From the IMG/VR virus record IMGVR_UViG_3300047558_000137, positions 62,001-126,000 of that record: a DNA stretch of 64,000 nucleotides; one strand, 5' to 3'. Shown here one piece after another: positions 1 to 11,893 of this stretch (position 1 is its first letter; every line of letters starts with the position of its first letter). Both the position numbers and the translations under genes were made by a program. The notes under the pieces are model-generated. The model was not told the DNA's origin, ran no database searches, and saw only the letters and a program-made list of their open reading frames with translations.

Positions 1-6
1 GGCCAT

Positions 7-630
7 ATGGCACTAGTTGTCTATAGTGACACATTGCCACGTATGATCCACGACGAAGTTATGCGTCAATTAGAAAGTCCGGTTGGCCAAAACGCCAAAG
101 AACTCAGTGACGTATTATTCCGTACAGTAATGGCCGATGGTCGTAATGCTTTAGAAGTATTGCACCGTGAAGGCTTTATTAAGAAAGTTCCTACTAGCCA
201 AGTGTTAATTACACCAACTAGTAAGAGCACAGTTCGTTTAGATGAACTCAACGACATCTTAGACGAAATGGAAAAGGGTGAAGAAGCCGTTAAACGTTTA
301 CAAGACATTGATAAAAACTCTGGTATGCAAACCAAGAAGCGTGTTCGTGAAGGCCGCGAAGTTGGTATGCCACCAAACAATCAAAGTCTAAGTAGAACCA
401 ATGTTGATGTTAACGCTACTGATAGTGCGGCAGCATATCTAAAGGGCGCTTTAAGCGACAGTGATCTTGCAGAACAGCGCAAGAGCCAAGCTGAACAAAT
501 GAAGCGTCAGGCCGAGCAGTTACTTGCTGAAGCCAAGAGATTAGAAACTGAAGCAAATGAACTATCACCTGCAAATGTCAAAACAACAAGAGCCAAAAAA
601 GCCCCGAAGACAAAAAAGCAAGAGGCTTAA
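7..630 (+). CDS. Hypothetical phage protein with C-terminal coiled coil and basic tail (may start upstream of the window)
   Basis: 207-aa ORF in frame with the downstream gene cluster; helical Glu/Gln/Lys-rich C-terminus. Confidence 0.7.
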   Translation: MALVVYSDTLPRMIHDEVMRQLESPVGQNAKELSDVLFRTVMADGRNALEVLHREGFIKKVPTSQVLITPTSKSTVRLDELNDILDEMEKGEEAVKRLQDIDKNSGMQTKKRVREGREVGMPPNNQSLSRTNVDVNATDSAAAYLKGALSDSDLAEQRKSQAEQMKRQAEQLLAEAKRLETEANELSPANVKTTRAKKAPKTKKQEA

Positions 631-922
631 TTTAAATAAAAGAGAACAATGGGAGCGATTACTCAAGGAAGTTAATACTGAGTACGCACCCATTGGTGTT
701 ATTTTATTCTTAACAGTTAACTTAAAAGACGGAACTAAGGTCGAAGTTAACATAGCCGAAATGCTCGAAGACGGTGCCGATCCTGAAGTGATCGAAAACA
801 TCGTCACCAAGAAACTAAATGAACTAGATCACATTATTAGTGACGTTGACTTTCATATCAGCGTTGATAGTGTTGCAAAGACAGTTCAACCCTTTACCGA
901 TCAACTTTTAAGAGACTTATGA
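575..922 (+). CDS. Hypothetical protein
   Basis: ORF 557..922; ATG at 575 (MSKQQ...) is the likelier start; stop overlaps the DHFR start (ATGA). Confidence 0.65.
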   Translation: MSKQQEPKKPRRQKSKRLNLNKREQWERLLKEVNTEYAPIGVILFLTVNLKDGTKVEVNIAEMLEDGADPEVIENIVTKKLNELDHIISDVDFHISVDSVAKTVQPFTDQLLRDL

Positions 923-1428
923 TTAACGCCTTATTCGCCGTAGACAGTTACGGCGGAATGGGGTTTAATGGTACAATGCCATGGCCTCACAATTCCGCTG
1001 ACTTACAAAATTTTAAATCTTTAACAATGGGACATGTTGTTGTCATGGGTCGTAAGACTTGGTCTGACAAAAACTTACCAAAGCCCTTATTAGGAAGAAC
1101 AACTTACGTTGCTACGAACAAACCGTTCTTACCATACACATCAACTATTTCTGGAGATTTAAAAACAGAAATTCTTAAACTAGAAGACCTACACCGAGAC
1201 AAAATTATTTGGGTCATTGGCGGTCCTGAAGTATTAGAACAATGTGATGGAATTTTTGATCGTTTATATTTGACTCACTACAAAGGATCGTATAAAATAG
1301 ATACTAAGTTAAATCTAAAAAACTTTTTATCTGGGTGGAGTCAAAAGACAGCCACAGCAGATCCTAAAACAAATTTTACAACAGTGGTATATGAAAGTTT
1401 ATTTAAACGCACTTCAAGAAGTTCTTAA
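919..1428 (+). CDS. folA: Dihydrofolate reductase
   Basis: GGMGFNGTMPWP, DLQNFKSLT, VVMGRKTW and WVIGG motifs; directly upstream of thyA, as in T4 frd-td. Confidence 0.93.
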   Translation: MINALFAVDSYGGMGFNGTMPWPHNSADLQNFKSLTMGHVVVMGRKTWSDKNLPKPLLGRTTYVATNKPFLPYTSTISGDLKTEILKLEDLHRDKIIWVIGGPEVLEQCDGIFDRLYLTHYKGSYKIDTKLNLKNFLSGWSQKTATADPKTNFTTVVYESLFKRTSRSS

Positions 1429-2305
1429 TAATGGAACCGTTAAGCAAGATCGAACTGGCACTGGAACTATTAGTCAATTTGGTATGCAACAGAGATATAA
1501 TCTTGCAGAATCCTTTCCAGCGGTTACAACTAAAAAACTAGCCTGGAAATCTGTTGTATCAGAGTTGCTGTGGTTCATTGAAGGTTCAGGAGATGAAAAG
1601 CGGTTGCGAGAGATATTACATGGTAGCACCGAGTCTAGCAAGACGACTATCTGGACTGCAAATGCCACAGCACCTTATTGGCAACCTAAGGCCAAATACG
1701 AAGGAGACTTAGGTCGTGTATATGGAGTACAATGGCGCAAGTGGCGCACTCCAGTAGAACACAAACAAGAAACATTTAAAGATGATTTTGGTAGCACATA
1801 CAGTAGAGATGGATATGTGCATTTTAAAGAAGTCGATCAACTAAAGTCGTTGATTGAGGGTATTAAAGCAGACCCACACGGACGAAGACACATATTGACA
1901 GCGTGGAACCCCGGAGAATTAGAACTCATGGCTCTGCCCCCGTGTCATTGCTTTTCACAGTTTTATGTTAGTGCAGATGGCCGACTAAGTTGCCAAATGT
2001 ATCAAAGAAGTTGCGACCTGTTTTTAGGTGTCCCATTTAATATCGCAAGCTACTCGCTCCTTACTGCGATGATAGCTCAAGTGTGCGGCCTAGCGGTCGG
2101 AGAGTTCGTTCACGTTCTCGGCGATGCACACATCTACCTAAACCATGTTGAACAGGTAAAAGAACAGCTATCACGTGAACCATTACCTGCGCCAACTCTT
2201 TGGTTGAATCCTGACATAACTGATATTACAAAGTTTACTATGGCCGATATCAGACTAGACGGATACACAAGCCATGCAACAATTAAAGCGGAGATGGCAG
2301 TATGA
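1391..2305 (+). CDS. thyA: Thymidylate synthase
   Basis: DRTGTGT, ELLWF, LPPCH (catalytic Cys), YQRSCD, PFNIASY and GDAHIY motifs. Confidence 0.97.
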   Translation: MKVYLNALQEVLNNGTVKQDRTGTGTISQFGMQQRYNLAESFPAVTTKKLAWKSVVSELLWFIEGSGDEKRLREILHGSTESSKTTIWTANATAPYWQPKAKYEGDLGRVYGVQWRKWRTPVEHKQETFKDDFGSTYSRDGYVHFKEVDQLKSLIEGIKADPHGRRHILTAWNPGELELMALPPCHCFSQFYVSADGRLSCQMYQRSCDLFLGVPFNIASYSLLTAMIAQVCGLAVGEFVHVLGDAHIYLNHVEQVKEQLSREPLPAPTLWLNPDITDITKFTMADIRLDGYTSHATIKAEMAV

Positions 2306-3267
2306 AATTTATTGTAACCGGTGGTGCTGGCTTTATTGGACACAATGTTGTTAGACAGCTCGAATCACAAGGGCACGACTGCTTTGTATTAGACAGCGTA
2401 ACAGATTATGGGTTTGTTAATGCAGACGAATTAGCATACCTGTACCAAGAACGTAGATCACGTATGAAGTCGGGAGTACATCATATTGATCTCAGAGATC
2501 ATAAATCTGTAGAAGATTTCTTTCGTGCGTTTAACGGTGTACATGCAGTAATACATTTGGCCAGCTTTCCCCGACAGAAAGTAGTTGGCCAAAATCCTAT
2601 ACTAGCCAGCGAAGTAATGAGTACCAGTCTAGTAAACATGTTGGAACTAACAAGACAGCTTGGTATACCTAAGTTTGTTTATATTAGTAGCAGTATGGTC
2701 TACGGAGACTTTAATGATGATGTCACTGAAGACTACAACTGCCGACCACAGGGACAATATGGAATTATGAAACTAATGGGAGAACACCTTGTTAAAGATT
2801 ATACTCGTCGTGGTTGCTTTGATCATGTTATTATTCGTCCCTCTGCTGTCTATGGCGAGTACGATGTCGAAGATCGTGTGGTTAGTAAATTCATGCTTAG
2901 TGCTATGCGCGGCGAAACTCTACGTGTTAATGGAGCAAATGAAACACTCGATTTCACGTATGTAGAAGATGCTGCCGCCGGTATCGTGGGCGCCGCATTA
3001 AACCCTAAAGCGGTTAATGGAACATATAACATTACAAAGTCGCATAGCACAAGTCTATTAGAAGCGGCTGCATTGGCTATTAAGATTGCAGGAAAAGGCA
3101 GTGTTGAAGTTCGCGACAAGGATGCAGATTTCCCATCACGTGGTGCATTAAACATTGCAGCCGCACGTAGGGACTTTGGGTTCAATCCTACTGTAGATGT
3201 TGAAGAAGGATTTCAACGTTACCACGATTGGTTTAAAGCGAGTGAGTTTTGGGCACCAAAGCTATAA
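2302..3267 (+). CDS. NAD-dependent nucleotide-sugar epimerase/dehydratase (extended SDR)
   Basis: VTGGAGFIG Rossmann motif, SSSMVYG, YGIMK (YxxxK). Confidence 0.9.
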   Translation: MKFIVTGGAGFIGHNVVRQLESQGHDCFVLDSVTDYGFVNADELAYLYQERRSRMKSGVHHIDLRDHKSVEDFFRAFNGVHAVIHLASFPRQKVVGQNPILASEVMSTSLVNMLELTRQLGIPKFVYISSSMVYGDFNDDVTEDYNCRPQGQYGIMKLMGEHLVKDYTRRGCFDHVIIRPSAVYGEYDVEDRVVSKFMLSAMRGETLRVNGANETLDFTYVEDAAAGIVGAALNPKAVNGTYNITKSHSTSLLEAAALAIKIAGKGSVEVRDKDADFPSRGALNIAAARRDFGFNPTVDVEEGFQRYHDWFKASEFWAPKL

Positions 3268-4352
3268 TTCCGTTTTTTGGTATTAAGCGACAGTACCAAA
3301 ATCTACGCGAAGAATTACTACATATTACTGACCAAGTATATAGTAGTGGTAAAGTATTAGACGGGGAATACACCCAGCGGTTTGAGCAGTTAATTGCTAC
3401 CCGCTGTAATAGACGCTTTGCAATCGCGGTAAATTCGTGTACGCAAGGGCTTTTATTCGCGCTACAAACGCTTTATCCGCCGGGGTTGGTACTCATACCT
3501 ACCCTGAGCTTTGCAGCCACGTTAAACACGGTTTTATTAACCGAGCATGTACCCGCTTTTGTGGACGTGGATTACCAGGGTCTAATGGATCTAAATAATG
3601 TAAACTTTAGTTTAAATGATCGGAATATTGCCGCTGTTATGTATGTTAACTTATTCGGTAATACTTTGGACTACGATAAGTTTAGGGTAATGACTGAGTT
3701 TTGGGGACAGAAGCCACGCATCATCGAAGATGCTGCTCAGAGTTTCGGCGCACGATATAAGGGCATACCGTCGGGAAAGATGGGAGATGTCAGTGTACTA
3801 AGTTTTGATCCAACTAAGAATCTACCCAACTATGGATCAGGCGGAATGATCCTAACCGACGATTATCACTTGGCCGAGAACTTTCTTGATCTACGTGACA
3901 ACGGTAAACATGGTATACACGAAGCACCGGGTACTAACAGCAAGATGAGTGAAAGTGACTGTGCTCAGTTAACAGTCAAGTTACAATATTTTGATGAGTG
4001 GCAAGATCGTCGTGATGCTATTGCTCGATATTACACTCAACAATTACATCCTTACGTTGATGTATTAGGTCCCGGAGAGGATGTAGAACATGCCTGGCAT
4101 AAGTTTGTCATTCGTGTGCAGAACGATAGATACAAACTACAGAGCCATCTAAGCCTTAAAGGCGTAGAAACTAAGATACACTATGCCCAACCATTGGACA
4201 CATTATCAGTTGGTGTTGCCTATGCACAACACGGTGTTTGTATTAACTCTGCTGAGTTTAGTCGAGAGACACTTAGCTTGCCTATATACCCTGAATTAAC
4301 AGATAGCGAAGTTGAATACATCGCGCAATCTGTTAAAGAGTTTTATCATTAA
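3249..4352 (+). CDS. DegT/DnrJ/EryC1/StrS PLP-dependent sugar aminotransferase
   Basis: AVNSCTQGL, IIEDAAQSFG, SFDPTKNL (PLP Lys), GGMILT, LSLPIYP. Confidence 0.92.
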   Translation: MGTKAIIPFFGIKRQYQNLREELLHITDQVYSSGKVLDGEYTQRFEQLIATRCNRRFAIAVNSCTQGLLFALQTLYPPGLVLIPTLSFAATLNTVLLTEHVPAFVDVDYQGLMDLNNVNFSLNDRNIAAVMYVNLFGNTLDYDKFRVMTEFWGQKPRIIEDAAQSFGARYKGIPSGKMGDVSVLSFDPTKNLPNYGSGGMILTDDYHLAENFLDLRDNGKHGIHEAPGTNSKMSESDCAQLTVKLQYFDEWQDRRDAIARYYTQQLHPYVDVLGPGEDVEHAWHKFVIRVQNDRYKLQSHLSLKGVETKIHYAQPLDTLSVGVAYAQHGVCINSAEFSRETLSLPIYPELTDSEVEYIAQSVKEFYH

Positions 4353-4797
4353 GCTCGTAGGCCCTTGGATTAGTTAAGTAGAAATCAGTTTCGCCGGGAC
4401 CTTTTTTGGTATGCAAGTTCCAGTCCGGTAGTAAACGCTTTACCATTCTGGCATACAAACTTGTGCGAGAATCCCCTTCGGAACTAAATCGTATTTCTAA
4501 AACTTTGTTGCCATACTGTTTTAAAAACTCTCTAGTAATATCAACAGCGGATGCTATAACAGTATTGGAATTTCCAGTACCAGTCATTCCAAATGTTTTG
4601 TCCCAACCCTCTTGATCTCGTTGTTGAAATGCAATAGTCCAAACAGTTGGATCACGATGATTCATTACTCTAGCAGACCACAGATACTCAATATCGCCTG
4701 CTTTAAAACTAGCAAATGCTTCTTCGCTACCACGAAATTCCCATGCCCATTGTTTTCCAGGTTGAAATAGTTCAGTGATAAAATCTGTTGCTCGCAT
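4333..4797 (-). CDS. Hypothetical protein with N-terminal capsid-targeting-like peptide (MRATDFITE)
   Basis: 154-aa ORF; N-terminus nearly identical to that of 41509..42144; TAAATA box 4 nt upstream of the ATG. Confidence 0.7.
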   Translation of the reverse strand: MRATDFITELFQPGKQWAWEFRGSEEAFASFKAGDIEYLWSARVMNHRDPTVWTIAFQQRDQEGWDKTFGMTGTGNSNTVIASAVDITREFLKQYGNKVLEIRFSSEGDSRTSLYARMVKRLLPDWNLHTKKGPGETDFYLTNPRAYELNDKTL

Positions 4798-7440
4798 CTA
4801 GTATTTAGCGTCATAACGGGCACGTAACCATGCCCATTCAAAGCTCAACTGTAGCTTTGCGGGATCTCCTGCTACTTCGTCATAGTAGGCAACAGCATCA
4901 TTTGCACCATCTATACAGTAATTGCTATAGTTGCCCTGCGCCACAGTAAGCCAAGTATTGAGTCTATGTTCGGTTTCTAGTGTGGGCTGGGTGGCCATAA
5001 ACAAACGTAGTTTTAATACTTCTCTAAATGCTGTACGCCATGTAGTCCAAGCGTCTTGATTAAAGTGTGCTATGCCCGACAAAACCGGCACTGATTCGTG
5101 CGGTTGTGACAAAGTAAAGTCTATTCCCGGCGCATTATTTGATAAAACGAGGCTCTTATTGTAGGCAATCATGCCCATGTGTCCGTACTCCAGTCCGTTA
5201 ACAGGATTACGTGCATTAAAGATGTAATGCTTTGGCTCTTGCCAATAGTCAGGTTGCCAGTGCCAATCGAACTCGCCGCCCAGAACTTCTAGTTTGGCAA
5301 ACACTGCAAAGAACCAATTTGTTTCACTTGCGCGGGCAGCAGCTTGATACGCAGCCACACGCCCATTAACACCGCGGATCCATTTTACATCACGATTGCT
5401 TTGATAACAGGCGTGCTCGTACCAACGTTGCTCATCTGGTTCCCCATTGCTGATATAGACAATATCCAAATCCGGAGTAAATCTTACATTACGAACTTTG
5501 CTAGTTTCTAAATATGGGTAATCATAGACTTGCGTTTTAATGTACTTCTTGATATCTCTTGGAATCATTGATGTACTCTTATCGGTACTTAGGTCCCTGG
5601 CAACACGATCCTTTTCGGTCCATAGGCAAGTATTGAAATTGCCCATACCAGCAAGATTAGGATCATTGGTAAACATAGCATACGATGATGTAAACGTATG
5701 CGCCTTAATTGCTTCAATTAAGTTGTCACCTTTATAATATACTGCGGGAACTGGCCAACGCTCAACTCGTTGATCAAAAACATAGTTAATAACATTAAAC
5801 CAGTCAAGTAACTCTAGTTCAACCATCTGCTTTTTAAATGATTCAACGTGTATGTAGAATGTATCGCCACGTAGCTCTGCATTATTCTTGCCTGCTACAC
5901 TACCATTAACAAAGCAGTGTATCATTTCCTTTTGCCATGGTTCAGGTTGCCATGTAAAGTCAAAGAAGTCATATGTACAAACACTGTTTAATATCCACAC
6001 ATACTCAGTTGTGGCTGTGTTCATGATACGCTTAAATGTATCCAGGTAGTTATCCATGAATCTAGTCTTAACTACATCATAATGATTGCGTAGCATCTCG
6101 TATTGGCTCTCTGGATTGCCATGATCAATGTAGTACATGTTCCAGATGTTTTCAGGCTTAACTACTTTCTGGTCCGGAACAAAGTTTAAGTTGGGAAATT
6201 CTTCTAAACTCTTGGCCCACTTGGCGTGTCGTTCAAACTCGTAACGATTGATTAAGAATGTATCCGACCATTTGTTGTGTTGACTTGCAAACACATGAGT
6301 CATGTAGTTTTGCCATGGCTCAGCATGCCAAGCAAAATCAAATTCATCATAGTTGTATTCGCTACTAATAACCCAGAATTTACTAGTACGACTACGTGTA
6401 ACACAACGCTTGATAGTATCCATCATGCTGTTGGCATAACGAACTTTTGTTACAGTGTAGTCTTCGGCAAGTCGTTCGTAACGTGCTTGTGCAGTATCAT
6501 TGCCTCTATCAATAAAGAATATATCTAATACTTCAACAGCAGACTTTTGTCCTACTGTGGGAATGTCGCCGCCAAACTTTAGTTCTGTTGCACTGGGCAC
6601 AGTGTATGTTAGGCCAATGCTTTGTTGATAGTCGGTACCAAAGTGATATACATAGGCAGGCTCGCCGGGGTCAGGTACCCAGCTGAAGTCTACACTATCT
6701 TCGTTAACTTCTTCGGGTATAGACCATAGAGTCTTATTAGGTAATAACTCGGCCCTAGGATAGTCCATATACTTTACAGGACTGTCTTCTGTAATGTCGG
6801 GGTGCGTCCATTCCACTGTGGGCATTTTCTCTGCTGGCCAGTGTTGATTGCCAAACACATACGTCATAGGAGGATCGCCTGGATCGGGCAACCAACTGTA
6901 ATCAAAGTGATATCTATGCTCACTCCTACTGCTCCACTGCATCATATTAGTCGCCAGAGTTGCCTTGGGATAATCCATGTACTTGCGTTCAGTGGCACCG
7001 GGTGTGTGGTACTCAACAGTGGGCATTACTTCAGCTGGATACCATTGATTACCGAAGACATATATGTAAGGAGGATCCATTGGATGTGGTACCCAACTAA
7101 AGTCAAAATCCATTGAGTATTTAGATGGTGCCCAATTTTCTAAACTGGCCTTGGTCTCAACTACTGTATGATGAAATTGCCACTTGCGTTCTTGTACACT
7201 ATCCGTGTGTGCTAGGTATGCACCACCATACTGATTCCATTGCGTAGGCCATACGTGCGTGTGTGTACTTTCCCATGGAACAGGCCTATAGTCAAAATCA
7301 AAGTTAGTGTAATCATTGTTCCCATAAATATACCAGTAGTATCCAGTACGGCACTGTGCCGCAGCATCATCAAGATCCTGAGCAGGCTTTTCAAAAGCAA
7401 ACAAGTTGGGTTTTGGCCCTGAATAAAAAACGTCAAACAT
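4798..7440 (-). CDS. Large repeat protein built from degenerate GT-A/GT2-like modules
   Basis: 880 aa; repeated F/DxSW.PDP..P.Y.YVFG units and repeated (D/N)(I/M)(F/Y)(F/Y)I..GN ... FD(F/W).W.PE/D.W modules. Confidence 0.6.
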   Translation of the reverse strand: MFDVFYSGPKPNLFAFEKPAQDLDDAAAQCRTGYYWYIYGNNDYTNFDFDYRPVPWESTHTHVWPTQWNQYGGAYLAHTDSVQERKWQFHHTVVETKASLENWAPSKYSMDFDFSWVPHPMDPPYIYVFGNQWYPAEVMPTVEYHTPGATERKYMDYPKATLATNMMQWSSRSEHRYHFDYSWLPDPGDPPMTYVFGNQHWPAEKMPTVEWTHPDITEDSPVKYMDYPRAELLPNKTLWSIPEEVNEDSVDFSWVPDPGEPAYVYHFGTDYQQSIGLTYTVPSATELKFGGDIPTVGQKSAVEVLDIFFIDRGNDTAQARYERLAEDYTVTKVRYANSMMDTIKRCVTRSRTSKFWVISSEYNYDEFDFAWHAEPWQNYMTHVFASQHNKWSDTFLINRYEFERHAKWAKSLEEFPNLNFVPDQKVVKPENIWNMYYIDHGNPESQYEMLRNHYDVVKTRFMDNYLDTFKRIMNTATTEYVWILNSVCTYDFFDFTWQPEPWQKEMIHCFVNGSVAGKNNAELRGDTFYIHVESFKKQMVELELLDWFNVINYVFDQRVERWPVPAVYYKGDNLIEAIKAHTFTSSYAMFTNDPNLAGMGNFNTCLWTEKDRVARDLSTDKSTSMIPRDIKKYIKTQVYDYPYLETSKVRNVRFTPDLDIVYISNGEPDEQRWYEHACYQSNRDVKWIRGVNGRVAAYQAAARASETNWFFAVFAKLEVLGGEFDWHWQPDYWQEPKHYIFNARNPVNGLEYGHMGMIAYNKSLVLSNNAPGIDFTLSQPHESVPVLSGIAHFNQDAWTTWRTAFREVLKLRLFMATQPTLETEHRLNTWLTVAQGNYSNYCIDGANDAVAYYDEVAGDPAKLQLSFEWAWLRARYDAKY

Positions 7441-8620
7441 GTATAATATAGCTAACCATTATGAGAATATCTACGAGTATCTTAAGACTATTATAACAGA
7501 TCCTCGATTATTATATCTCTACCCTTTTGGATCAACTCAACCAGAAAATATAGAGATACTTAGAAATGACATTGATCCACCAGTACGCCGGGGCCCTCTG
7601 TTTATATTCTACGATCAAGAGCCTTTAAATTTTTCTTATAACCAACCATTCTTTGATTACATTATAGAAAATACAAAAGGTCCTTATGTATTAGTACACA
7701 CCGAAAGAACAAGTGAGGAAGTGGACCGTATATGCGACCATTATGGGTTTGCCAAACTAGAATATTTCTTTCATATATTTGCAGCCGCAGATTGGTACAG
7801 GGGACATGAGTACTTACCTGGAATTGTTGCACCCGAAAATAGAAAGTTATCTAAGTCCTACATTACATTTAATAGACTAACAAGCAATGAACGTATATAT
7901 CGTAGTTTATTTGTTAATGAACTATACAAGGCAGATTTATTAGAATCGGGGCATGTTAGTTTTAGTAAAGATTGCCCCGATGGTGGCAGATTTGACATTA
8001 ATTTACTTGCTGGCATAGAGAACCAAGGACTTGATTCCTTGCTAGTTAAAGATGCTATTACCAATATAAATCAATTGCCTGAGCTGCGTATAGACTTTCC
8101 CGATCAACATATACCTAATCAGAGTATGTTGTTAAGCCCACTGCAACAACTAATGGAGAGCTTTATATTTGTAGTTACAGAAACCTGCTATTGGCAAAAC
8201 AAAACTCATTTAACAGAAAAGATATTTAAACCTATTGTTCTACGTATGCCGTTTGTATTAGTTGGCTGTACAAACAATCTAGAATATTTACGTAGTTACG
8301 GGTTTAAGACATTTGGTAATTACTGGGATGAAAGTTACGATTCTATTGAAGATCCAATATTGCGTATGCAGGCCGTGGCTGCTATCTTAAAACAACTGTC
8401 TAATATGACGGCAGATGAACAATATCGTATGCTGTTGGATATGCAACCTATACTAGAGCACAACTACAATCTATTCAATGATCCTGCATTTGTTAGAAAA
8501 GAATGGGATCACCTGTTAAGTCAACTTAATAGTATAAGTGCCTATTATAAATTTGAGCCACCGTATACCCTTGACTTGAAAACAGGACAGGCGATTCCTA
8601 AAGTATTACAAGATGCTTGA
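7439..8620 (+). CDS. Putative glycosyltransferase (GT10/fucosyltransferase-like TEK motif)
   Basis: FIFVVTET...HLTEKIFKP...PFVLVG resembles the GT10 nucleotide-sugar-binding motif; paralogous to 26134..27105. Confidence 0.5.
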   Translation: MYNIANHYENIYEYLKTIITDPRLLYLYPFGSTQPENIEILRNDIDPPVRRGPLFIFYDQEPLNFSYNQPFFDYIIENTKGPYVLVHTERTSEEVDRICDHYGFAKLEYFFHIFAAADWYRGHEYLPGIVAPENRKLSKSYITFNRLTSNERIYRSLFVNELYKADLLESGHVSFSKDCPDGGRFDINLLAGIENQGLDSLLVKDAITNINQLPELRIDFPDQHIPNQSMLLSPLQQLMESFIFVVTETCYWQNKTHLTEKIFKPIVLRMPFVLVGCTNNLEYLRSYGFKTFGNYWDESYDSIEDPILRMQAVAAILKQLSNMTADEQYRMLLDMQPILEHNYNLFNDPAFVRKEWDHLLSQLNSISAYYKFEPPYTLDLKTGQAIPKVLQDA

Positions 8621-9161
8621 AGTAATTGAAATGTTGCTCTAAGGTCCAAGTGGCAGGATCAATTACCGTACCATCATATGTTTCGTATACGGCCGTAAAC
8701 ACGTTTGTATAACGTTGGAATGGTAACCACATATTAGGTGTTTTACTGGCCCAACCTGCATCTTTAAGTGCCATATGTTTAGTGCGGCTTAATCGCACAG
8801 TGGGCGCATTAAGCGCCTGCTCGGTGGTTATAGTGCCTGCTAGTAACAGATCACGAATACGACTTGCTGGGATCAGATGTTCAAAGTCGCATTGATCGTC
8901 TGCATTAACTTCGTGATAATGTGCTTTCATGCCATCACGCTCCTCAATGCAGTAGGCGTGGTATCGACGAAGATAATAATCAATATCGTTACGAACTTCC
9001 CGTAACCACTGTTGATCATTCTTAATGATTTGATATTCGCCTACTAAGCGATCAATATGCGTACTGCAATGTTTAGCCACAGTACGGTAAGTCTCAGATG
9101 TACGCTTAGTCTTACCGTAGACTGGTGCTGTAAATTTCTCTAATGATTCTTGAAGTGTCAT
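8598..9161 (-). CDS. Putative HNH/beta-beta-alpha-Me nuclease-like protein
   Basis: DFEHLIPAS resembles the EH(I/V)xP core of HNH/DUF1524 domains; coupled to the upstream gene by overlap. Confidence 0.45.
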   Translation of the reverse strand: MTLQESLEKFTAPVYGKTKRTSETYRTVAKHCSTHIDRLVGEYQIIKNDQQWLREVRNDIDYYLRRYHAYCIEERDGMKAHYHEVNADDQCDFEHLIPASRIRDLLLAGTITTEQALNAPTVRLSRTKHMALKDAGWASKTPNMWLPFQRYTNVFTAVYETYDGTVIDPATWTLEQHFNYFKHLVIL

Positions 9162-10219
9162 TGTGTATCTGGGAAAAGTCCTGGGGCAATATTACCCGCT
9201 AACACTCCCATTGTAGCACCTTCTCCGTGATAGGGCAAGTCTAATGTGCCACCGTTGCGTAAATGCAACTCACGCAAGAAGTTAGCCATAGCACTTGGGG
9301 CCGACCATGTAGCACCTGGGTTTTTGTGTTCCCATTGTACTTTGGCTTTAGCATGAACTAATGAGCTTGACTTAAATGTTGGCTTAATACTCATTAACAG
9401 TGTTTTCATCCAATCTGGCGGCAAGTTAATATTAGGACTAGTCTTAGCCAATCTGTGCAATTCGTAGAGGCCAATAAAATTTCCTTGATCTATTTCCTCC
9501 TGCAAAGGAAATACTGTTTGGATAGCGTCAAGAATATTGTATAAAGTTTTGCCTGTGTCATCTACTTCGATAGCCTTTTGAGCGTACTTGAAGTGGCTAA
9601 AGAATCGATCATTATCTCCTCGGAGATTATCGCTATTGCGACTGTTCTTGTCCTGTAGATCAATTCCGCAGGCATCAAATTGATCTTGCATTGTACGTGC
9701 CAGTACGTTCTTCAGTTCTCTGCTGCCGTTCTTGTAACGTACTAGAGCATTGCGATGTAGGTCTCCGGGAGTCAGACGTTTAACACCTGTATCGTTTAGC
9801 ATTTCAAATGCTTCGCTGGCAAAGTGTGGATCACTTGTAACAACAACAGCACAGGGTACTTCTGTGTATCCTAGTATAGCCGCAGTAATAGTACGATGCT
9901 GTCCATCATAGGTATCAATGCGACCAGTTTCGCTAACACGACAGGCACTCACAGGACTGCAAATACGTGGATCCCATTTCTTAAGGAGAGAAATGATATG
10001 AAGAAAAACTACGTCCCTCTGAATTTCGTAGTCAATCCAGAGGTCAGCAATTGGTTGCATTGTGCATTGTGGAAAGCTAAAACCTTCAACATCATGCTTG
10101 GCCTTGGCCTTGATACGCCATGCATCAAGTTCTTTTTGAGTTACGTTGAAGTGTGCTTTAAGTTGTGTCTCAACTTCGTCGGCGACTTCTGTTAGTTTTC
10201 TTGTTAAACGTTTTGCCAT
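9158..10219 (-). CDS. ParB/Srx-fold protein with DGQHR motif
   Basis: IDYEIQRD...W...YDGQHRTITA motif typical of ParB-like/DUF262/DndB-type domains. Confidence 0.7.
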   Translation of the reverse strand: MAKRLTRKLTEVADEVETQLKAHFNVTQKELDAWRIKAKAKHDVEGFSFPQCTMQPIADLWIDYEIQRDVVFLHIISLLKKWDPRICSPVSACRVSETGRIDTYDGQHRTITAAILGYTEVPCAVVVTSDPHFASEAFEMLNDTGVKRLTPGDLHRNALVRYKNGSRELKNVLARTMQDQFDACGIDLQDKNSRNSDNLRGDNDRFFSHFKYAQKAIEVDDTGKTLYNILDAIQTVFPLQEEIDQGNFIGLYELHRLAKTSPNINLPPDWMKTLLMSIKPTFKSSSLVHAKAKVQWEHKNPGATWSAPSAMANFLRELHLRNGGTLDLPYHGEGATMGVLAGNIAPGLFPDTQ

Positions 10220-10221
10220 GA

Positions 10222-10818
10222 TTATTTGTGTGATTTGTTTAAGAAAGGCAGCATGCCTGTTGTAGTGCTGAAGTGTTTCAGATAAAGTTCTTCAAGACTT
10301 TTGTGAATAGTGTTTTTAACTGTTATAGTTTTACCTGCTACAGTTGTAGTGAATGTATCAATAGGGCAGGCACGTGCCCAGATAGTAATTTCGTTGCCAG
10401 CATCAATACTCTCTCTGAGACTTTCTCTGATGTTGTAATCAGTGCCGTCGCCCTTTCGTAGTCGGCCGAGCCGGCAGACAGAAGAGCCCTTGGGTTGCCA
10501 TTCGGCATGGTATCTTTGAGATTCTCTAATACCAAGTGGGTTACCTGTTTCACCTAGTTTGAGAATTACATCATTTTCGACTACAACATAAATCCAACTC
10601 TTATGATCTGCATACATCAAATTCGTATTGATGTTGTAGTAAACCCACCCGCTATAGTTGTCTAATTTTACATCACAGACTTTTTCAAATCCATCCTCGA
10701 TGAATTTGTTAATATCAAATCCTTTGAATCCACGTGGAATTTTGTGACGGGAAGTTGCACCTTGTGCTGTGGTGCTAGTGTCTTCTGATTCAGAAGAGCT
10801 TTCGGCATCTAATAACAT
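10222..10818 (-). CDS. Putative GIY-YIG-like nuclease
   Basis: SWIYVVVENDVILKLGET...R and a C-terminal E..YL..F...G.LP.LN segment resemble GIY-YIG domains. Confidence 0.5.
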   Translation of the reverse strand: MLLDAESSSESEDTSTTAQGATSRHKIPRGFKGFDINKFIEDGFEKVCDVKLDNYSGWVYYNINTNLMYADHKSWIYVVVENDVILKLGETGNPLGIRESQRYHAEWQPKGSSVCRLGRLRKGDGTDYNIRESLRESIDAGNEITIWARACPIDTFTTTVAGKTITVKNTIHKSLEELYLKHFSTTTGMLPFLNKSHK

Positions 10819-10916
10819 AATATATTCTCCTACGGGTTATAACAGCGTACCATACGCTACCAGCCGATGCACTAAAATAAGTACCATACTAACGTGTGCA
10901 TCAACTAAGTGTTATT

Positions 10917-10946
10917 ATTATATTTAAAAGCTATGAGCTAAATCAA
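10917..10946 (-). promoter_or_regulatory. Sigma70-type promoter for the GIY-YIG/DGQHR/HNH cassette
   Basis: Minus strand TTGATT-N18-TATAAT. Confidence 0.6.
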
Positions 10947-11009
10947 ATTAATAGGTAAACTTAATTGGGCTAAAAGCACCTAAAAAGTAAATATGCGTAT
11001 ATAACGAGA

Positions 11010-11015
11010 TAAATA
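11010..11015 (+). promoter_or_regulatory. T4-like late promoter box TAAATA
   Basis: GATAAATA upstream of AAGGA-N6-ATG of 11038; a second TAAATA at 10988-10993. Confidence 0.5.
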
Positions 11016-11037
11016 ATAGTAGATCAAGGAAACTGTT

Positions 11038-11325
11038 ATGTCAAGACCAAAACCAACTGTACTGTTGGATCACGTTAATAAGAATACCTATAAGAGCCAG
11101 CAAATTCTGAATTCAGAAGGAATCTGGGCAGTCTTCTATGATAATATGCCTATCAATATGAAGAGCTTCAATATATTAACTTCATACCCAGGTCCAAAAT
11201 ATGGCAAAGTTAGTTTTAGCAATCCAGGTCATGCAATTAACTTGGCCAAGAAATTAAATACTCTATTCAAGAGCGATAAATTTACTGTAGTCTTGTTAAA
11301 GCAAGGTGATCAAATCTACCCCTAA
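11038..11325 (+). CDS. Hypothetical phage protein
   Basis: 95-aa ORF with SD (AAGGA) and late box. Confidence 0.75.
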   Translation: MSRPKPTVLLDHVNKNTYKSQQILNSEGIWAVFYDNMPINMKSFNILTSYPGPKYGKVSFSNPGHAINLAKKLNTLFKSDKFTVVLLKQGDQIYP

Positions 11326-11677
11326 TCGACAGTTGGAATTCCAACAGCGTGTGTTGTCTGCTTACGGACACGACCATCGCATATTTGTCGAACACGCCAA
11401 AGTTTGGTGGCGCAACCCAACTAATCATAACAGTCTACGCATGACTAGAACAGGTCTAGACTTCTTTACAAAAACTTTAGACCTAAAGACCTATAAGATT
11501 GCTGTAGATAGGCCATTGAACTTTAAACACCTAATACAGTTAGAGAGATTATTTACTGCACCGTATTTTTTACATCATGGTGCTATCACAGTGTTCAGTG
11601 AACAAGATGCTATTATGTTGCAACTACACGCAGGCAATCTAGATCAGTATCTAGATAATTTAGAAATCAATCAATAA
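11306..11677 (+). CDS. Hypothetical protein
   Basis: 123-aa ORF overlapping the previous gene; converges on the minus-strand block. Confidence 0.65.
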   Translation: MIKSTPNRQLEFQQRVLSAYGHDHRIFVEHAKVWWRNPTNHNSLRMTRTGLDFFTKTLDLKTYKIAVDRPLNFKHLIQLERLFTAPYFLHHGAITVFSEQDAIMLQLHAGNLDQYLDNLEINQ

Positions 11678-11893
11678 TTATTTAAACCCGCCACCATCCA
11701 TATTAACGCTGATAACGGATGGTGCAGTGGGATTTTCTTTAGTCAACTCAGCAATAGTGGCCAACAGTTCGTAGATATCGTTATGTAGACTACGTGCCTC
11801 TTGTGCGTTAAGAGTTAGTAGCTTGCCATTGGTTTGATTTAACTGACGCACACGGTCGTTAAACAGTTTTACGTGATACGGTAAATTATCCAT
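11678..11893 (-). CDS. Hypothetical protein
   Basis: 71-aa ORF in the tightly packed minus-strand array. Confidence 0.65.
   Translation of the reverse strand: MDNLPYHVKLFNDRVRQLNQTNGKLLTLNAQEARSLHNDIYELLATIAELTKENPTAPSVISVNMDGGGFK

What the first reader, a model, noticed from the sequence alone, without database searches (positions are those of the whole stretch)
8598..10818. GIY-YIG / DGQHR-ParB / HNH three-gene cassette under a host-type promoter
Seen: three coupled minus-strand genes with their own sigma70 promoter, inserted among glycan genes. They encode a GIY-YIG-like protein, a ParB-fold DGQHR protein and an EHLIP HNH-like protein. Established: ParB-like DUF262 plus HNH DUF1524 is the architecture of GmrSD type IV (modification-dependent) restriction enzymes, and DGQHR domains occur in DndB-related defence loci. 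Inference: a split GmrSD-like or other NTP-sensing nuclease system carried by a phage, perhaps against competing phages or host DNA, while its own deazaguanine-modified DNA is spared.
Basis: partly seen in the sequence, partly recalled or inferred. Interest (0 to 1): 0.65.

Follow-up and report, generated by a model that had tools for sequence, protein, structure and literature searches.

The report
Phage ParB-like/HNH-like gene pair plus homing endonuclease
The three genes are real, but they are a conserved, early-promoter-driven pair (a ParB-fold nucleotide-binding protein and a probable HNH-type nuclease) found in many freshwater jumbo phages, plus an unrelated selfish GIY-YIG homing-endonuclease gene that jumped in front of the pair.

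Summary
Three tightly packed minus-strand ORFs lie at 8598-10818 of a 374-kb freshwater jumbo-phage record, behind a sigma70-like promoter.

It is not a three-gene cassette.
- g2 (353 aa) has a ParB/Srx fold and a DGQHR motif. g3 (187 aa) has a conserved E-H-x-x-P...N...H motif. They form an ordered pair in 126 of 135 related viral loci and co-vary tightly (Mantel r 0.74).
- The pair has its own near-consensus TTGACA-17-TATAAT promoter in 66 of 71 relatives.
- In a more distant phage lineage, the same genomic slot holds a single fused protein: g2-like domain plus canonical HNH (hhalign 99.2%).
- g1 is GIY-YIG-like and occurs in only 5 lineages, at two different insertion points. In the window it sits between the pair's leader/Shine-Dalgarno sequence and the g2 start codon. 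The g2/g3 junction in relatives holds at least 8 unrelated small nuclease-type ORF families.
- The pair is dispensable. The closest complete relative lacks it and has DNA methyltransferases in that slot.

Best reading: an early-expressed, NTP-gated nuclease module with GmrSD-like logic, in a hypervariable DNA-conflict island. By sequence it is not a GmrSD, DndB or PADLOC family member. The nuclease fold of g3 is unproven. The genome has no TGT/DpdA or QueC, so the deazaguanine self-protection idea is unsupported.

The parts
10917..10946 (-). Sigma70-type promoter (TTGATT, 18-nt spacer, TATAAT). It is homologous to the near-consensus promoter that precedes g2 in relatives.
   Evidence: window; 66/71 relatives against 10/71 in the coding control; aligned leaders.
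10819..10916 (-). 5' leader with a hairpin (AGCGTA-TGG-TACGCT, 10858-10844) and a Shine-Dalgarno GGAG (10830-10827). In relatives this leader and SD serve g2; here they serve g1.
   Evidence: a perfect stem of >=5 bp with a 3-nt loop in 31/69 relatives against 4.6% of shuffles, with 14 different stem sequences.
10222..10818 (-). g1, 198 aa: GIY-YIG-superfamily-like free-standing (homing-type) endonuclease gene. It is an insertion, not part of the conserved module.
   Evidence: present in 5 lineages, two insertion sites. (family alignment). (phrog_1111 endonuclease, E 1.2e-4). (Atlas neighbours all in the GIY-YIG clan, 0.91-0.94; TM 0.58-0.80). Pfam gives no hit.
9158..10219 (-). g2, 353 aa. 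N-terminal helical hairpin (1-45), ParB/Srx-fold domain (about 51-169) with conserved Q67-R68, D105-G-Q107-H108 and F133...N142, then a helical C-terminal domain (170-350) with no matched fold. In the window it has no SD of its own.
8598..9161 (-). g3, 187 aa. Long helical hairpin (22-73) followed by a small alpha/beta domain carrying D92-F-E94-H95-L-I-P98 ... N118 ... H129. Candidate His-Me/HNH-type nuclease, translationally coupled to g2 (ATGA). Its 3' end overlaps the convergent 393-aa ORF by 23 nt.

Best explanation
Two separate things are present.

(A) g2-g3 is a two-gene operon transcribed from its own near-consensus host-type (sigma70) promoter, so probably early in infection.
- g2 is a ParB/Srx-fold protein of a DUF6551-related family. 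I infer that it binds an NTP and DNA and acts as the switch or targeting subunit.
- g3 is its dedicated partner, most likely a His-Me (HNH-type) nuclease with H95 as general base and E94/H129 as metal ligands.
- Together they would form an NTP-gated DNA nuclease or nickase. This is the same division of labour as GmrS/GmrD and as the ParB-fold-HNH fusions seen elsewhere.
- The module sits in a hypervariable island that in other relatives holds DNA methyltransferases or a ParB-like gene coupled to a GIY-YIG gene, and it can be lost. I therefore read it as an accessory DNA-conflict function: attack on host or competing DNA, or exclusion. I do not read it as core replication or packaging.

(B) g1 is an unrelated GIY-YIG-type free-standing homing endonuclease gene. 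It inserted precisely between the operon's leader/SD and the g2 start codon, and so took over the promoter.

Shown: gene order, co-conservation, co-variation, promoter conservation, the ParB fold, the fusion in the same slot, patchy presence, and the mobility pattern of g1.
Inferred: NTP binding, nuclease activity of g3, physical interaction, and the biological target.
For: - Pairing: g2 and g3 are adjacent, in the same order and strand, in 126 of 135 loci that hold either gene. Even g2 homologs at 24-36% identity are followed by g3 homologs of 186-210 aa.
- Co-variation: Mantel r 0.74 between g2 and g3 distances (74 loci), against 0.13-0.32 with neighbours 1-2 kb away.
- Abundance: equal for the two genes, 1033 and 1059 clusters.
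- Rosetta stone: P0206 (475 aa) has an N-terminal region homologous to g2 residues 51-298 (hhalign 99.2%, E 2.6e-19) plus a Pfam HNH domain. It lies between orthologs of the same flanking genes: exo, g156, g95 on one side and MoxR, VWA on the other.
- Partner swapping: divergent g2-like genes are coupled to small GIY-YIG-like ORFs (L250, L281, L063) or lie beside SPPY-motif methyltransferases (L266).
- Promoter.
- Fold of g2.
- Literature: phage DUF6551-type ParB-fold proteins bind CTP or ATP, and ParB-fold-HNH fusions exist (bioRxiv 10.1101/2025.10.10.680097).
- g3 motif: invariant E-H-x-x-P resembling the D-x-D-H-I-x-P-x-S of Cas9-type HNH_4. GmrD/DUF1524 is itself a His-Me finger related to Cas9 HNH (PMC4619093).
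- Dispensability and island: G001 (354 kb, 98% complete, TerL 85% identical) lacks both genes, with a 5/5 positive control. Methyltransferases fill its slot. With g156 as an independent anchor, 21 loci have the pair and 20 have neither.
- g1 mobility.
Against: - N118 and H129 are not kept in the most distant g3 homologs.
- g3 shows no profile similarity to the HNH part of the fusion.
- R109 of DGQHR is not conserved in distant g2 homologs, so NTP binding is not assured.
- A few loci have g3 without g2 (L226, L277) or g2-like without g3, so strict interdependence is not proven.
- PADLOC has no hit.
- No expression or biochemical data exist (one search found no RNA runs).
Confidence: 0.5

Rival explanations
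1. One reading: g1, g2 and g3 are one three-component system (GIY-YIG + ParB-DGQHR + HNH), a split GmrSD-like modification-dependent restriction system that spares the phage's own deazaguanine DNA.
For: The three genes are tightly packed behind one promoter in this genome. The ParB fold plus an HNH-like protein resembles the GmrS/GmrD architecture.
Against: g1 is present in only 5 of about 130 loci that have the pair, and lies between g2 and g3 in the other four. No DUF262, DUF1524 or PADLOC hits. No TGT/DpdA or QueC in the genome. ThyA is an ordinary thymidylate synthase.
Confidence: 0.04
2. g2-g3 is not a nuclease. It is a DNA-binding regulatory or clamp module: a ParB-like NTP switch (like DndB, KorB or Noc) with an adaptor protein. 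It would control transcription, DNA modification or DNA organisation early in infection, possibly autoregulating through the conserved leader element.
For: The best structural matches of g2 are the CTP-dependent clamps and regulators KorB, Noc and ParB. The g3 fold is unassigned. N118 and H129 are not universally kept. A conserved hairpin or palindrome lies in the leader. Relatives place g2-like or g3 genes beside methyltransferases.
Against: The fusion in the same slot carries a canonical HNH nuclease domain. Alternative partners are GIY-YIG-like nucleases. E94-H95-x-x-P98 is invariant across all g3 homologs. No HTH was detected in g2.
Confidence: 0.2
3. The pair processes the phage's own DNA, for example by site-specific nicking as T5 SciA does, or by replication or packaging-associated cutting. 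It would not be a conflict system.
For: The top VIA hit of g3 is the T5 SciA nickase. The pair is vertically inherited in one fixed slot next to a 5'-3' exonuclease block. Both genes are very abundant and under evident purifying selection.
Against: The closest complete relative lacks both genes, and about a third of anchor loci lack them. The pair is about 250 kb from the large terminase gene. An early-type sigma70 promoter fits late DNA-processing functions poorly. The SciA match is at noise level.
Confidence: 0.12
4. g2-g3 is itself a selfish mobile element: an HNH homing endonuclease with a ParB-like DNA-binding helper.
For: Presence is patchy among relatives. The pair lies in a region rich in homing endonuclease genes.
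Against: The pair is always in the same slot, even in a lineage with only 31-57% identical flanking genes. Within the clade identity is 65-83% and the pair has its own conserved promoter and leader. Other homing endonuclease genes target its junction, which suggests the pair is the conserved landing pad rather than the invader.
Confidence: 0.07

Closest known systems
GmrSD / BrxU / SspE-type enzymes (DUF262 ParB/Srx NTPase + DUF1524 His-Me nuclease; PMC4619093)
   Same: A ParB/Srx-fold protein with a D-G-Q-(Q/H)-R motif is paired with a protein carrying an (D/E)-H ... N ... (H/N) His-Me-type motif. The two occur either as separate genes or fused. The expected logic is an NTP-modulated nuclease.
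   Different: Pfam, NCBIfam and PADLOC detect no similarity to DUF262, DUF1524 or any gmrSD/brxU model. The pair is phage-encoded, behind an early promoter. The C-terminal helical domain of g2 and the N-terminal helical hairpin of g3 have no counterpart. The H-to-N spacing is 23 residues here against about 55 in GmrD. Modification dependence is unknown.
DUF6551 (PF20188) phage ParB-CTPase-fold proteins and ParB-fold-HNH fusions (bioRxiv 10.1101/2025.10.10.680097)
   Same: This is the nearest sequence family. phmmer links g2 residues 45-175 to proteins that score as DUF6551. The fusion P0206 carries both a weak DUF6551 hit and an HNH domain. The preprint reports CTP or ATP binding by phage DUF6551-type proteins and notes ParB-fold-HNH fusions.
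   Different: g2 itself does not hit the DUF6551 model. It is longer, with an extra N-terminal hairpin and a different C-terminal domain. Its nuclease partner is a separate, sequence-unrelated 187-aa protein.
DndB / DGQHR-domain proteins (TIGR03187, PF14072) and DpdB of the 7-deazaguanine Dpd system
   Same: The DGQHR motif on a ParB/Srx fold.
   Different: No hit to the DGQHR/DndB models. No dnd, ssp or dpd partner genes. No TGT/DpdA or QueC in the genome. R109 of the motif is not conserved in distant homologs.
Free-standing GIY-YIG homing endonucleases of large phages (T4 Seg-type; my own knowledge)
   Same: g1 is small and has GIY-YIG-clan neighbours in the Atlas. It is sporadic, inserted in intergenic positions next to conserved genes, at different sites in different phages, and it piggybacks on a resident promoter.
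   Different: No significant Pfam GIY-YIG hit. No recognisable DNA-binding (NUMOD/IENR) domain was detected. Homing activity is untested.

Membership tests
ParB/Srx superfamily (g2) | ParB/Srx alpha/beta fold | tested here: met
ParB/Srx superfamily (g2) | Nucleotide-binding motifs (Box I-like QR, Box II-like DGQHR, Box III-like F...N) and actual NTP binding | tested here: inconclusive
   Q67, R68, F133 and N142 are invariant. D105, Q107 and H108 are kept in at least 90% of 20 sequences down to 20% identity, but R109 varies. Binding itself cannot be tested here.
GmrSD type IV restriction | GmrS/DUF262 domain with DGQQR, detectable by the family model | tested here: not met
   No PF03235/DUF262 hit at E<=1. 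No PADLOC model hit. The only link is a weak profile-to-PDB match to a DUF262 protein, E 0.35.
GmrSD type IV restriction | GmrD/DUF1524 His-Me finger domain | tested here: not met
   No PF07510 hit for g3 at E<=1. The motif E-H-x-x-P...N...H is compatible with it but not diagnostic.
GmrSD type IV restriction | Cleavage dependent on DNA modification and stimulated by NTP | not testable with these tools
   Needs biochemistry.
DUF6551 (PF20188) | Score above the Pfam gathering threshold | tested here: not met
   g2 gives no DUF6551 hit. Its distant phmmer hits P0182 and P0196 do (E 5e-28 and 1e-21). g2 is therefore a sister family, not a member by the model.
DndB / DGQHR domain; DpdB | Match to TIGR03187/PF14072, with dnd or dpd (DpdA/TGT) genes present | tested here: not met
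   Searches give no hit. Searches find no TGT or QueC in the 374-kb genome, and the controls worked.
HNH / His-Me finger nucleases (g3) | beta-beta-alpha-Me fold with a catalytic His and metal ligands | tested here: inconclusive
GIY-YIG superfamily (g1) | GIY-YIG catalytic core recognised by family models or by fold | tested here: inconclusive
   Pfam gives no hit for any of the 6 family members. phrog_1111 'endonuclease' scores E 1.2e-4. Atlas named neighbours are all GIY-YIG clan (PF01541, Eco29kI, GIY_YIG_2) at 0.91-0.94 with 177-183 shared features; structure rows include GIY-YIG and T5orf172 clusters at TM 0.58-0.80. Invariant residues include W75, Y77, K87, G89, E90, R116, R119 and N194.
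Free-standing homing endonuclease genes (g1) | Sporadic presence and variable intergenic insertion sites next to conserved genes | tested here: met
   g1 occurs in 5 lineages among about 130 loci. It is upstream of g2 in the window and between g2 and g3 in L090, L105, L121 and L125; in L010 it is in another context. The same junction holds at least 8 other small ORF families, including HNH_3, HNH+NUMOD3 and MvaI/BcnI-like ones.
Known anti-phage defence systems (PADLOC-DB v2) | Any component model hit | tested here: not met
   No family hit at E<=1 for any of the three proteins.

The most novel reading that the evidence does not exclude
A previously undescribed, very abundant family of phage-encoded two-component nucleases. 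A ParB-fold NTP switch (sister to DUF6551) would load or license a divergent His-Me nuclease on DNA early in infection, and jumbo phages would use it offensively against host or rival-phage DNA. The partner would be interchangeable over evolution (separate HNH-like protein, fused HNH, GIY-YIG, methyltransferase), making the ParB-like protein a generic NTP-gated DNA-targeting chassis for different effectors.
Probability: 0.3. Interest if true: 0.7.

Novelty: new variant of a known kind. Interest (0 to 1): 0.5.

Why it matters
ParB-fold proteins were long seen as chromosome-segregation CTPases. Recent work shows the fold is reused widely, but almost none of the phage versions has a known function.

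- This family has about 1,000 clusters (at 90% identity) for each gene in public metagenomes. It has a clean genetic architecture: its own early promoter, translational coupling, a fused version in the same slot, and naturally occurring partner swaps.
- That makes it a tractable case for asking how a ParB-type NTP switch controls a nuclease, and what large phages use such a module for.
- It also shows that compact phage 'cassettes' can be chimeras of a resident operon and a homing endonuclease. This matters when defence-like systems are predicted from gene adjacency in a single genome.

Tried and rejected
- Sequence searches that found nothing: megablast and tblastn of the region and of all three proteins against 50,697 phage records; phmmer and profile searches against PDB sequences for g1, g2 and g3. 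The only relevant weak hits were SbnI and a DUF262 protein for g2.
- g3 fold: Foldseek against PDB and BFVD and the Atlas shape search returned only helical-hairpin look-alikes or the protein's own unnamed viral families.
- hhalign of the g3 profile against the four longer ParB-like relatives P0206, P0184, P0200 and P0215 showed no similarity. hhalign of the g2 and g3 profiles against the proteins that fill the slot in G001 also showed none.
- Complex prediction for g2 + g3 gave no verdict (score 0.01, controls not run). It is not used as evidence either way.
- A first DNA alignment of upstream regions (A7) used wrong coordinates and was discarded. It was redone in Python.
- RNAalifold on leader ends (A8) predicted nothing because MAFFT put two hairpin classes out of register. 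A loose hairpin count that allowed G-U pairs was not discriminating (50 of 69 regions with a stem of >=5 bp, against 358 of 560 shuffles). The stricter test replaced it.
- Rfam found nothing in 8300-11400.
- A wrong reading frame for L105 was corrected.
- Considered and rejected: DpdB/deazaguanine involvement, and ThyA being a hydroxymethylase (it passes the thymidylate synthase equivalog cut-offs).
- Not used: read laying (no RNA run holds the stretch), and the metagenome contigs and genome-contig scans.
Full report
**1. What is there**

The window is bases 62001-126000 of a 374,314-bp IMG/VR virus record rated 100% complete. The source is a freshwater metagenome. Its large terminase is 55% identical to that of Pseudomonas phage PA5oct-like jumbo phages.

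Three minus-strand ORFs lie at the stated coordinates:
- g1, 10222-10818, 198 aa
- g2, 9158-10219, 353 aa
- g3, 8598-9161, 187 aa

Two nt separate g1 from g2. g2 and g3 overlap by ATGA. Composition is unremarkable, and there are no tRNAs.

**2. First-pass annotation fails**

Pfam, NCBIfam and PADLOC give no significant hit for any of the three proteins. PHROGs gives only weak hits: 'endonuclease' for g1 (E 1.2e-4) and 'ParB-like' for g2 (E 2e-3). None of the three has a tblastn match in 50,697 deposited phage genomes. Yet g2 and g3 each have about 1,000 clusters of close, unnamed relatives in metagenomes.

**3. The cassette is a pair plus an intruder**

In IMG/VR contigs, g2 and g3 occur together, in the same order and strand, in 126 of 135 loci that hold either gene. 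g1 occurs only in this phage (plus an identical contig), in four other lineages and in one unrelated context (L010).

In those four lineages (L090, L105, L121, L125; 45-52% identity) g1 lies between g2 and g3, not upstream of g2.

The g2-g3 spacing is bimodal:
- about 5-22 bp, or
- about 350-630 bp, rarely about 1,000-1,150 bp.

The longer spacers hold at least 8 unrelated ORF families. These include HNH_3-type, HNH+NUMOD3 and MvaI/BcnI-like proteins. This is the signature of a homing-endonuclease landing site between two conserved genes.

g1's nearest named neighbours in the ESM Atlas are all GIY-YIG clan (0.91-0.94). Its Atlas model resembles GIY-YIG and T5orf172 clusters at TM 0.58-0.80. 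Pfam does not recognise any family member.

**4. The promoter is real and belongs to the pair**

Inside the window the sigma70-like match count is at chance. Across relatives, 66 of 71 non-redundant regions upstream of g2 carry a match of at least 9/12, often a perfect TTGACA-17-TATAAT. The coding control gives 10 of 71.

The -35 element begins 82-132 nt before the ATG. It is followed by a conserved leader and an AAGGA-type SD.

The window has the homologous promoter (TTGATT-18-TATAAT, 10946-10917), leader hairpin and SD, but they precede g1. g2 in the window has no SD and follows the g1 stop by 2 nt. So g1 inserted between the leader/SD and the g2 start codon, and it now rides on the pair's promoter.

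**5. What g2 is**

With a 20-sequence alignment reaching 20% identity, AlphaFold2 gives pLDDT 91.5.

Residues about 51-169 adopt the ParB/Srx fold:
- The top Foldseek hits are Noc, KorB, ParB, PadC, Srx and SerK.

The helical domain 170-350 has no convincing match.

Conserved positions map to the ParB nucleotide-pocket motifs: Q67-R68, D105-G-Q107-H108, F133 and N142. The Arg of DGQHR is lost in distant homologs.

An exhaustive search of 1.84 billion representatives found 108 hits. The distant ones (E 1e-5 to 1e-3) are DUF6551 proteins.

A 2025 preprint reports that phage DUF6551-type ParB-fold proteins bind CTP or ATP, and that ParB-fold-HNH fusions exist.

**6. What g3 is**

The model is confident (pLDDT 89.6). 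It shows a long helical hairpin followed by a small alpha/beta domain.

- E94, H95 and P98 are invariant down to 25% identity.
- N118 and H129 are kept in at least 90% of sequences, but are replaced (H129 by Asp) in the two most distant homologs.
- The segment D-F-E-H-L-I-P-A-S resembles the catalytic strand of Cas9-type HNH domains. That is the only Pfam signal (HNH_4, E 0.065).

I therefore call the nuclease assignment likely but unproven.

**7. Evidence that g2 and g3 work together, and with nuclease chemistry**

(a) Even g2 homologs at 24-36% identity are followed, usually overlapping, by g3 homologs.

(b) g2 and g3 distances co-vary at r 0.74 (74 loci). With genes 1-2 kb away the value is 0.13-0.32.

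(c) P0206, a 475-aa protein, has an N-terminal region that matches the g2 profile over g2 residues 51-298 (hhalign 99.2%, E 2.6e-19). Its C-terminus is a Pfam HNH domain. It lies in a phage contig between orthologs of the same flanking genes as in this genome: 5'-3' exonuclease 45%, g156 31% and g95 57% on one side, MoxR 42% and VWA 37% on the other. A fused version in the orthologous slot is classical Rosetta-stone evidence.

(d) In other branches the ParB-like gene is coupled to a small GIY-YIG-like ORF (L250, L281-287, L063), or lies beside an SPPY-motif DNA methyltransferase (L266). g3 without g2 lies near such methyltransferases in L226 and L277.

The complex prediction gave no verdict and is not used.

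**8. Core or accessory?**

The pair is always in one slot, downstream of the conserved block exo-g92-g156-g71-g95-g123, but it is not universal.

- G001 (354 kb, 98% complete) has a TerL 85% identical to the window phage's. That is closer than the five pair-bearing complete genomes tested, whose TerL is 59-80% identical (one of them in two pieces). G001 lacks both genes, and the positive control scored 5/5.
- Its slot holds a Dam-type methyltransferase, a second methyltransferase-like protein, a GIY-YIG gene, MoxR and VWA.
- With g156 as an independent anchor and profile HMMs, 57 loci could be scored: 21 have the pair, 20 have neither, and the rest have one gene (some at contig ends or divergent).
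- In L283, L285, L286 and L297, g123 abuts DegT-epimerase-ThyA directly. There the whole block g1-g2-g3-g393-g880-g154 is absent.
- In this genome the MoxR ortholog lies about 5 kb before the window. The island therefore spans roughly 15 kb.

**9. Interpretation**

The evidence points to an accessory, early, NTP-gated DNA nuclease module working by GmrSD-like logic:
- an early host-type promoter,
- a ParB-fold NTP-binding protein,
- a dedicated partner with a His-Me-type motif,
- a fused HNH version in the same slot,
- alternative nuclease or methyltransferase partners,
- location in a hypervariable island of DNA-modifying genes, and dispensability.

It is not a member of GmrSD, DndB or any PADLOC family by the tests run.

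The target is unknown. The genome lacks TGT/DpdA and QueC. It encodes an ordinary thymidylate synthase and DHFR. Nothing here shows modified DNA, and the neighbouring sugar-nucleotide genes are unexplained.

Rivals remain open: a regulatory clamp, self-DNA processing, or a selfish element (see the rival list).

**10. Novelty and score**

The architecture (ParB fold plus His-Me nuclease) is known. This family, its split form, its phage early-operon setting and its partner swapping are not described in the sources I could search. I rate it a new variant of a known kind, interest 0.5.

Noticed in passing
Relatives: between g2 and g3, e.g. L006:7052-7462, L008:7050-7469, L032:5460-6005, L030:5540-6004, L017:5456-6004, L004:7053-8045, L123:3379-4005: The g2/g3 junction is an insertion hot spot. 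It holds at least 8 unrelated ORF families of 120-330 aa, several of nuclease type (HNH_3, HNH+NUMOD3, MvaI/BcnI-like). Four families have no recognisable domain.
   Followed up: partly
window 10819-10916 (minus strand; hairpin 10858-10844) and the leaders upstream of g2 in relatives (coordinates): The leader carries a hairpin 18-34 nt upstream of the start codon, with compensatory stem changes (14 different perfect stems) and a T(T/G/A)G loop. It is present in 31/69 regions against 4.6% of shuffles. A second class reads CCCGC-ATTGTG-TCGGG. Rfam has no match. It could be a translational operator or a processing site, or, read as DNA, a palindromic binding site for the ParB-like protein.
   Followed up: partly
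window 11038-11677 (+): g95 and g123 are inverted relative to almost all relatives, where they are co-directional with g156 and g2. L259 shows the same inversion next to a divergent pair. The inversion borders the g1 insertion.
   Followed up: no
G000:C1 about 56,500-73,700 (window 1-11,700 plus about 5.5 kb upstream); G001:C1:84000-101000 (L222): A hypervariable island lies between MoxR/VWA and g123. In G001 it holds Dam-type and N6_N4-type methyltransferases and a GIY-YIG gene. In L283, L285, L286 and L297, g123 abuts DegT directly. Here it holds DHFR, ThyA, a 4,6-dehydratase/epimerase, a DegT-type aminotransferase, g154, g880, g393 and the three genes.
   Followed up: partly
L250:8878-10468, L281:9439-11017, L063:1427-2895: A divergent g2-like branch (406-412 aa in L250 and L281, where the motif reads W-E-G-Q-Q-[TS]; 372 aa in L063) is translationally coupled to a 116-134-aa GIY-YIG-like ORF instead of g3. 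The coupling is conserved across different phages.
   Followed up: partly
window 4798-7440 (-) and 7439-8620 (+): The 880-aa protein contains about six repeats of a motif like F-D-F-S-W-V-P-D-P-G-(D/E)-P-P-x-x-Y-V-F-G-N-Q and matches no family. The convergent 393-aa ORF also matches no family and overlaps the g3 3' end by 23 nt. Orthologs of both appear next to g2 in L004.
   Followed up: no
G010:C1:332608-335120: In one complete relative the large terminase matches in two pieces separated by about 960 bp. This suggests an intron, intein or homing-endonuclease insertion in TerL.
   Followed up: no
window 919-2305 (+): A DHFR gene is followed by a thymidylate synthase gene that passes the NCBIfam equivalog cut-offs. 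This is ordinary dTMP synthesis and argues against hydroxymethyl-pyrimidine DNA in this phage.
   Followed up: yes
L226:5502-7156, L277:9951-11783: Two lineages have g3 without g2, followed by an unknown protein of 191-237 aa and an SPPY-motif DNA methyltransferase. This could be a different nuclease/methylase arrangement built on g3.
   Followed up: no
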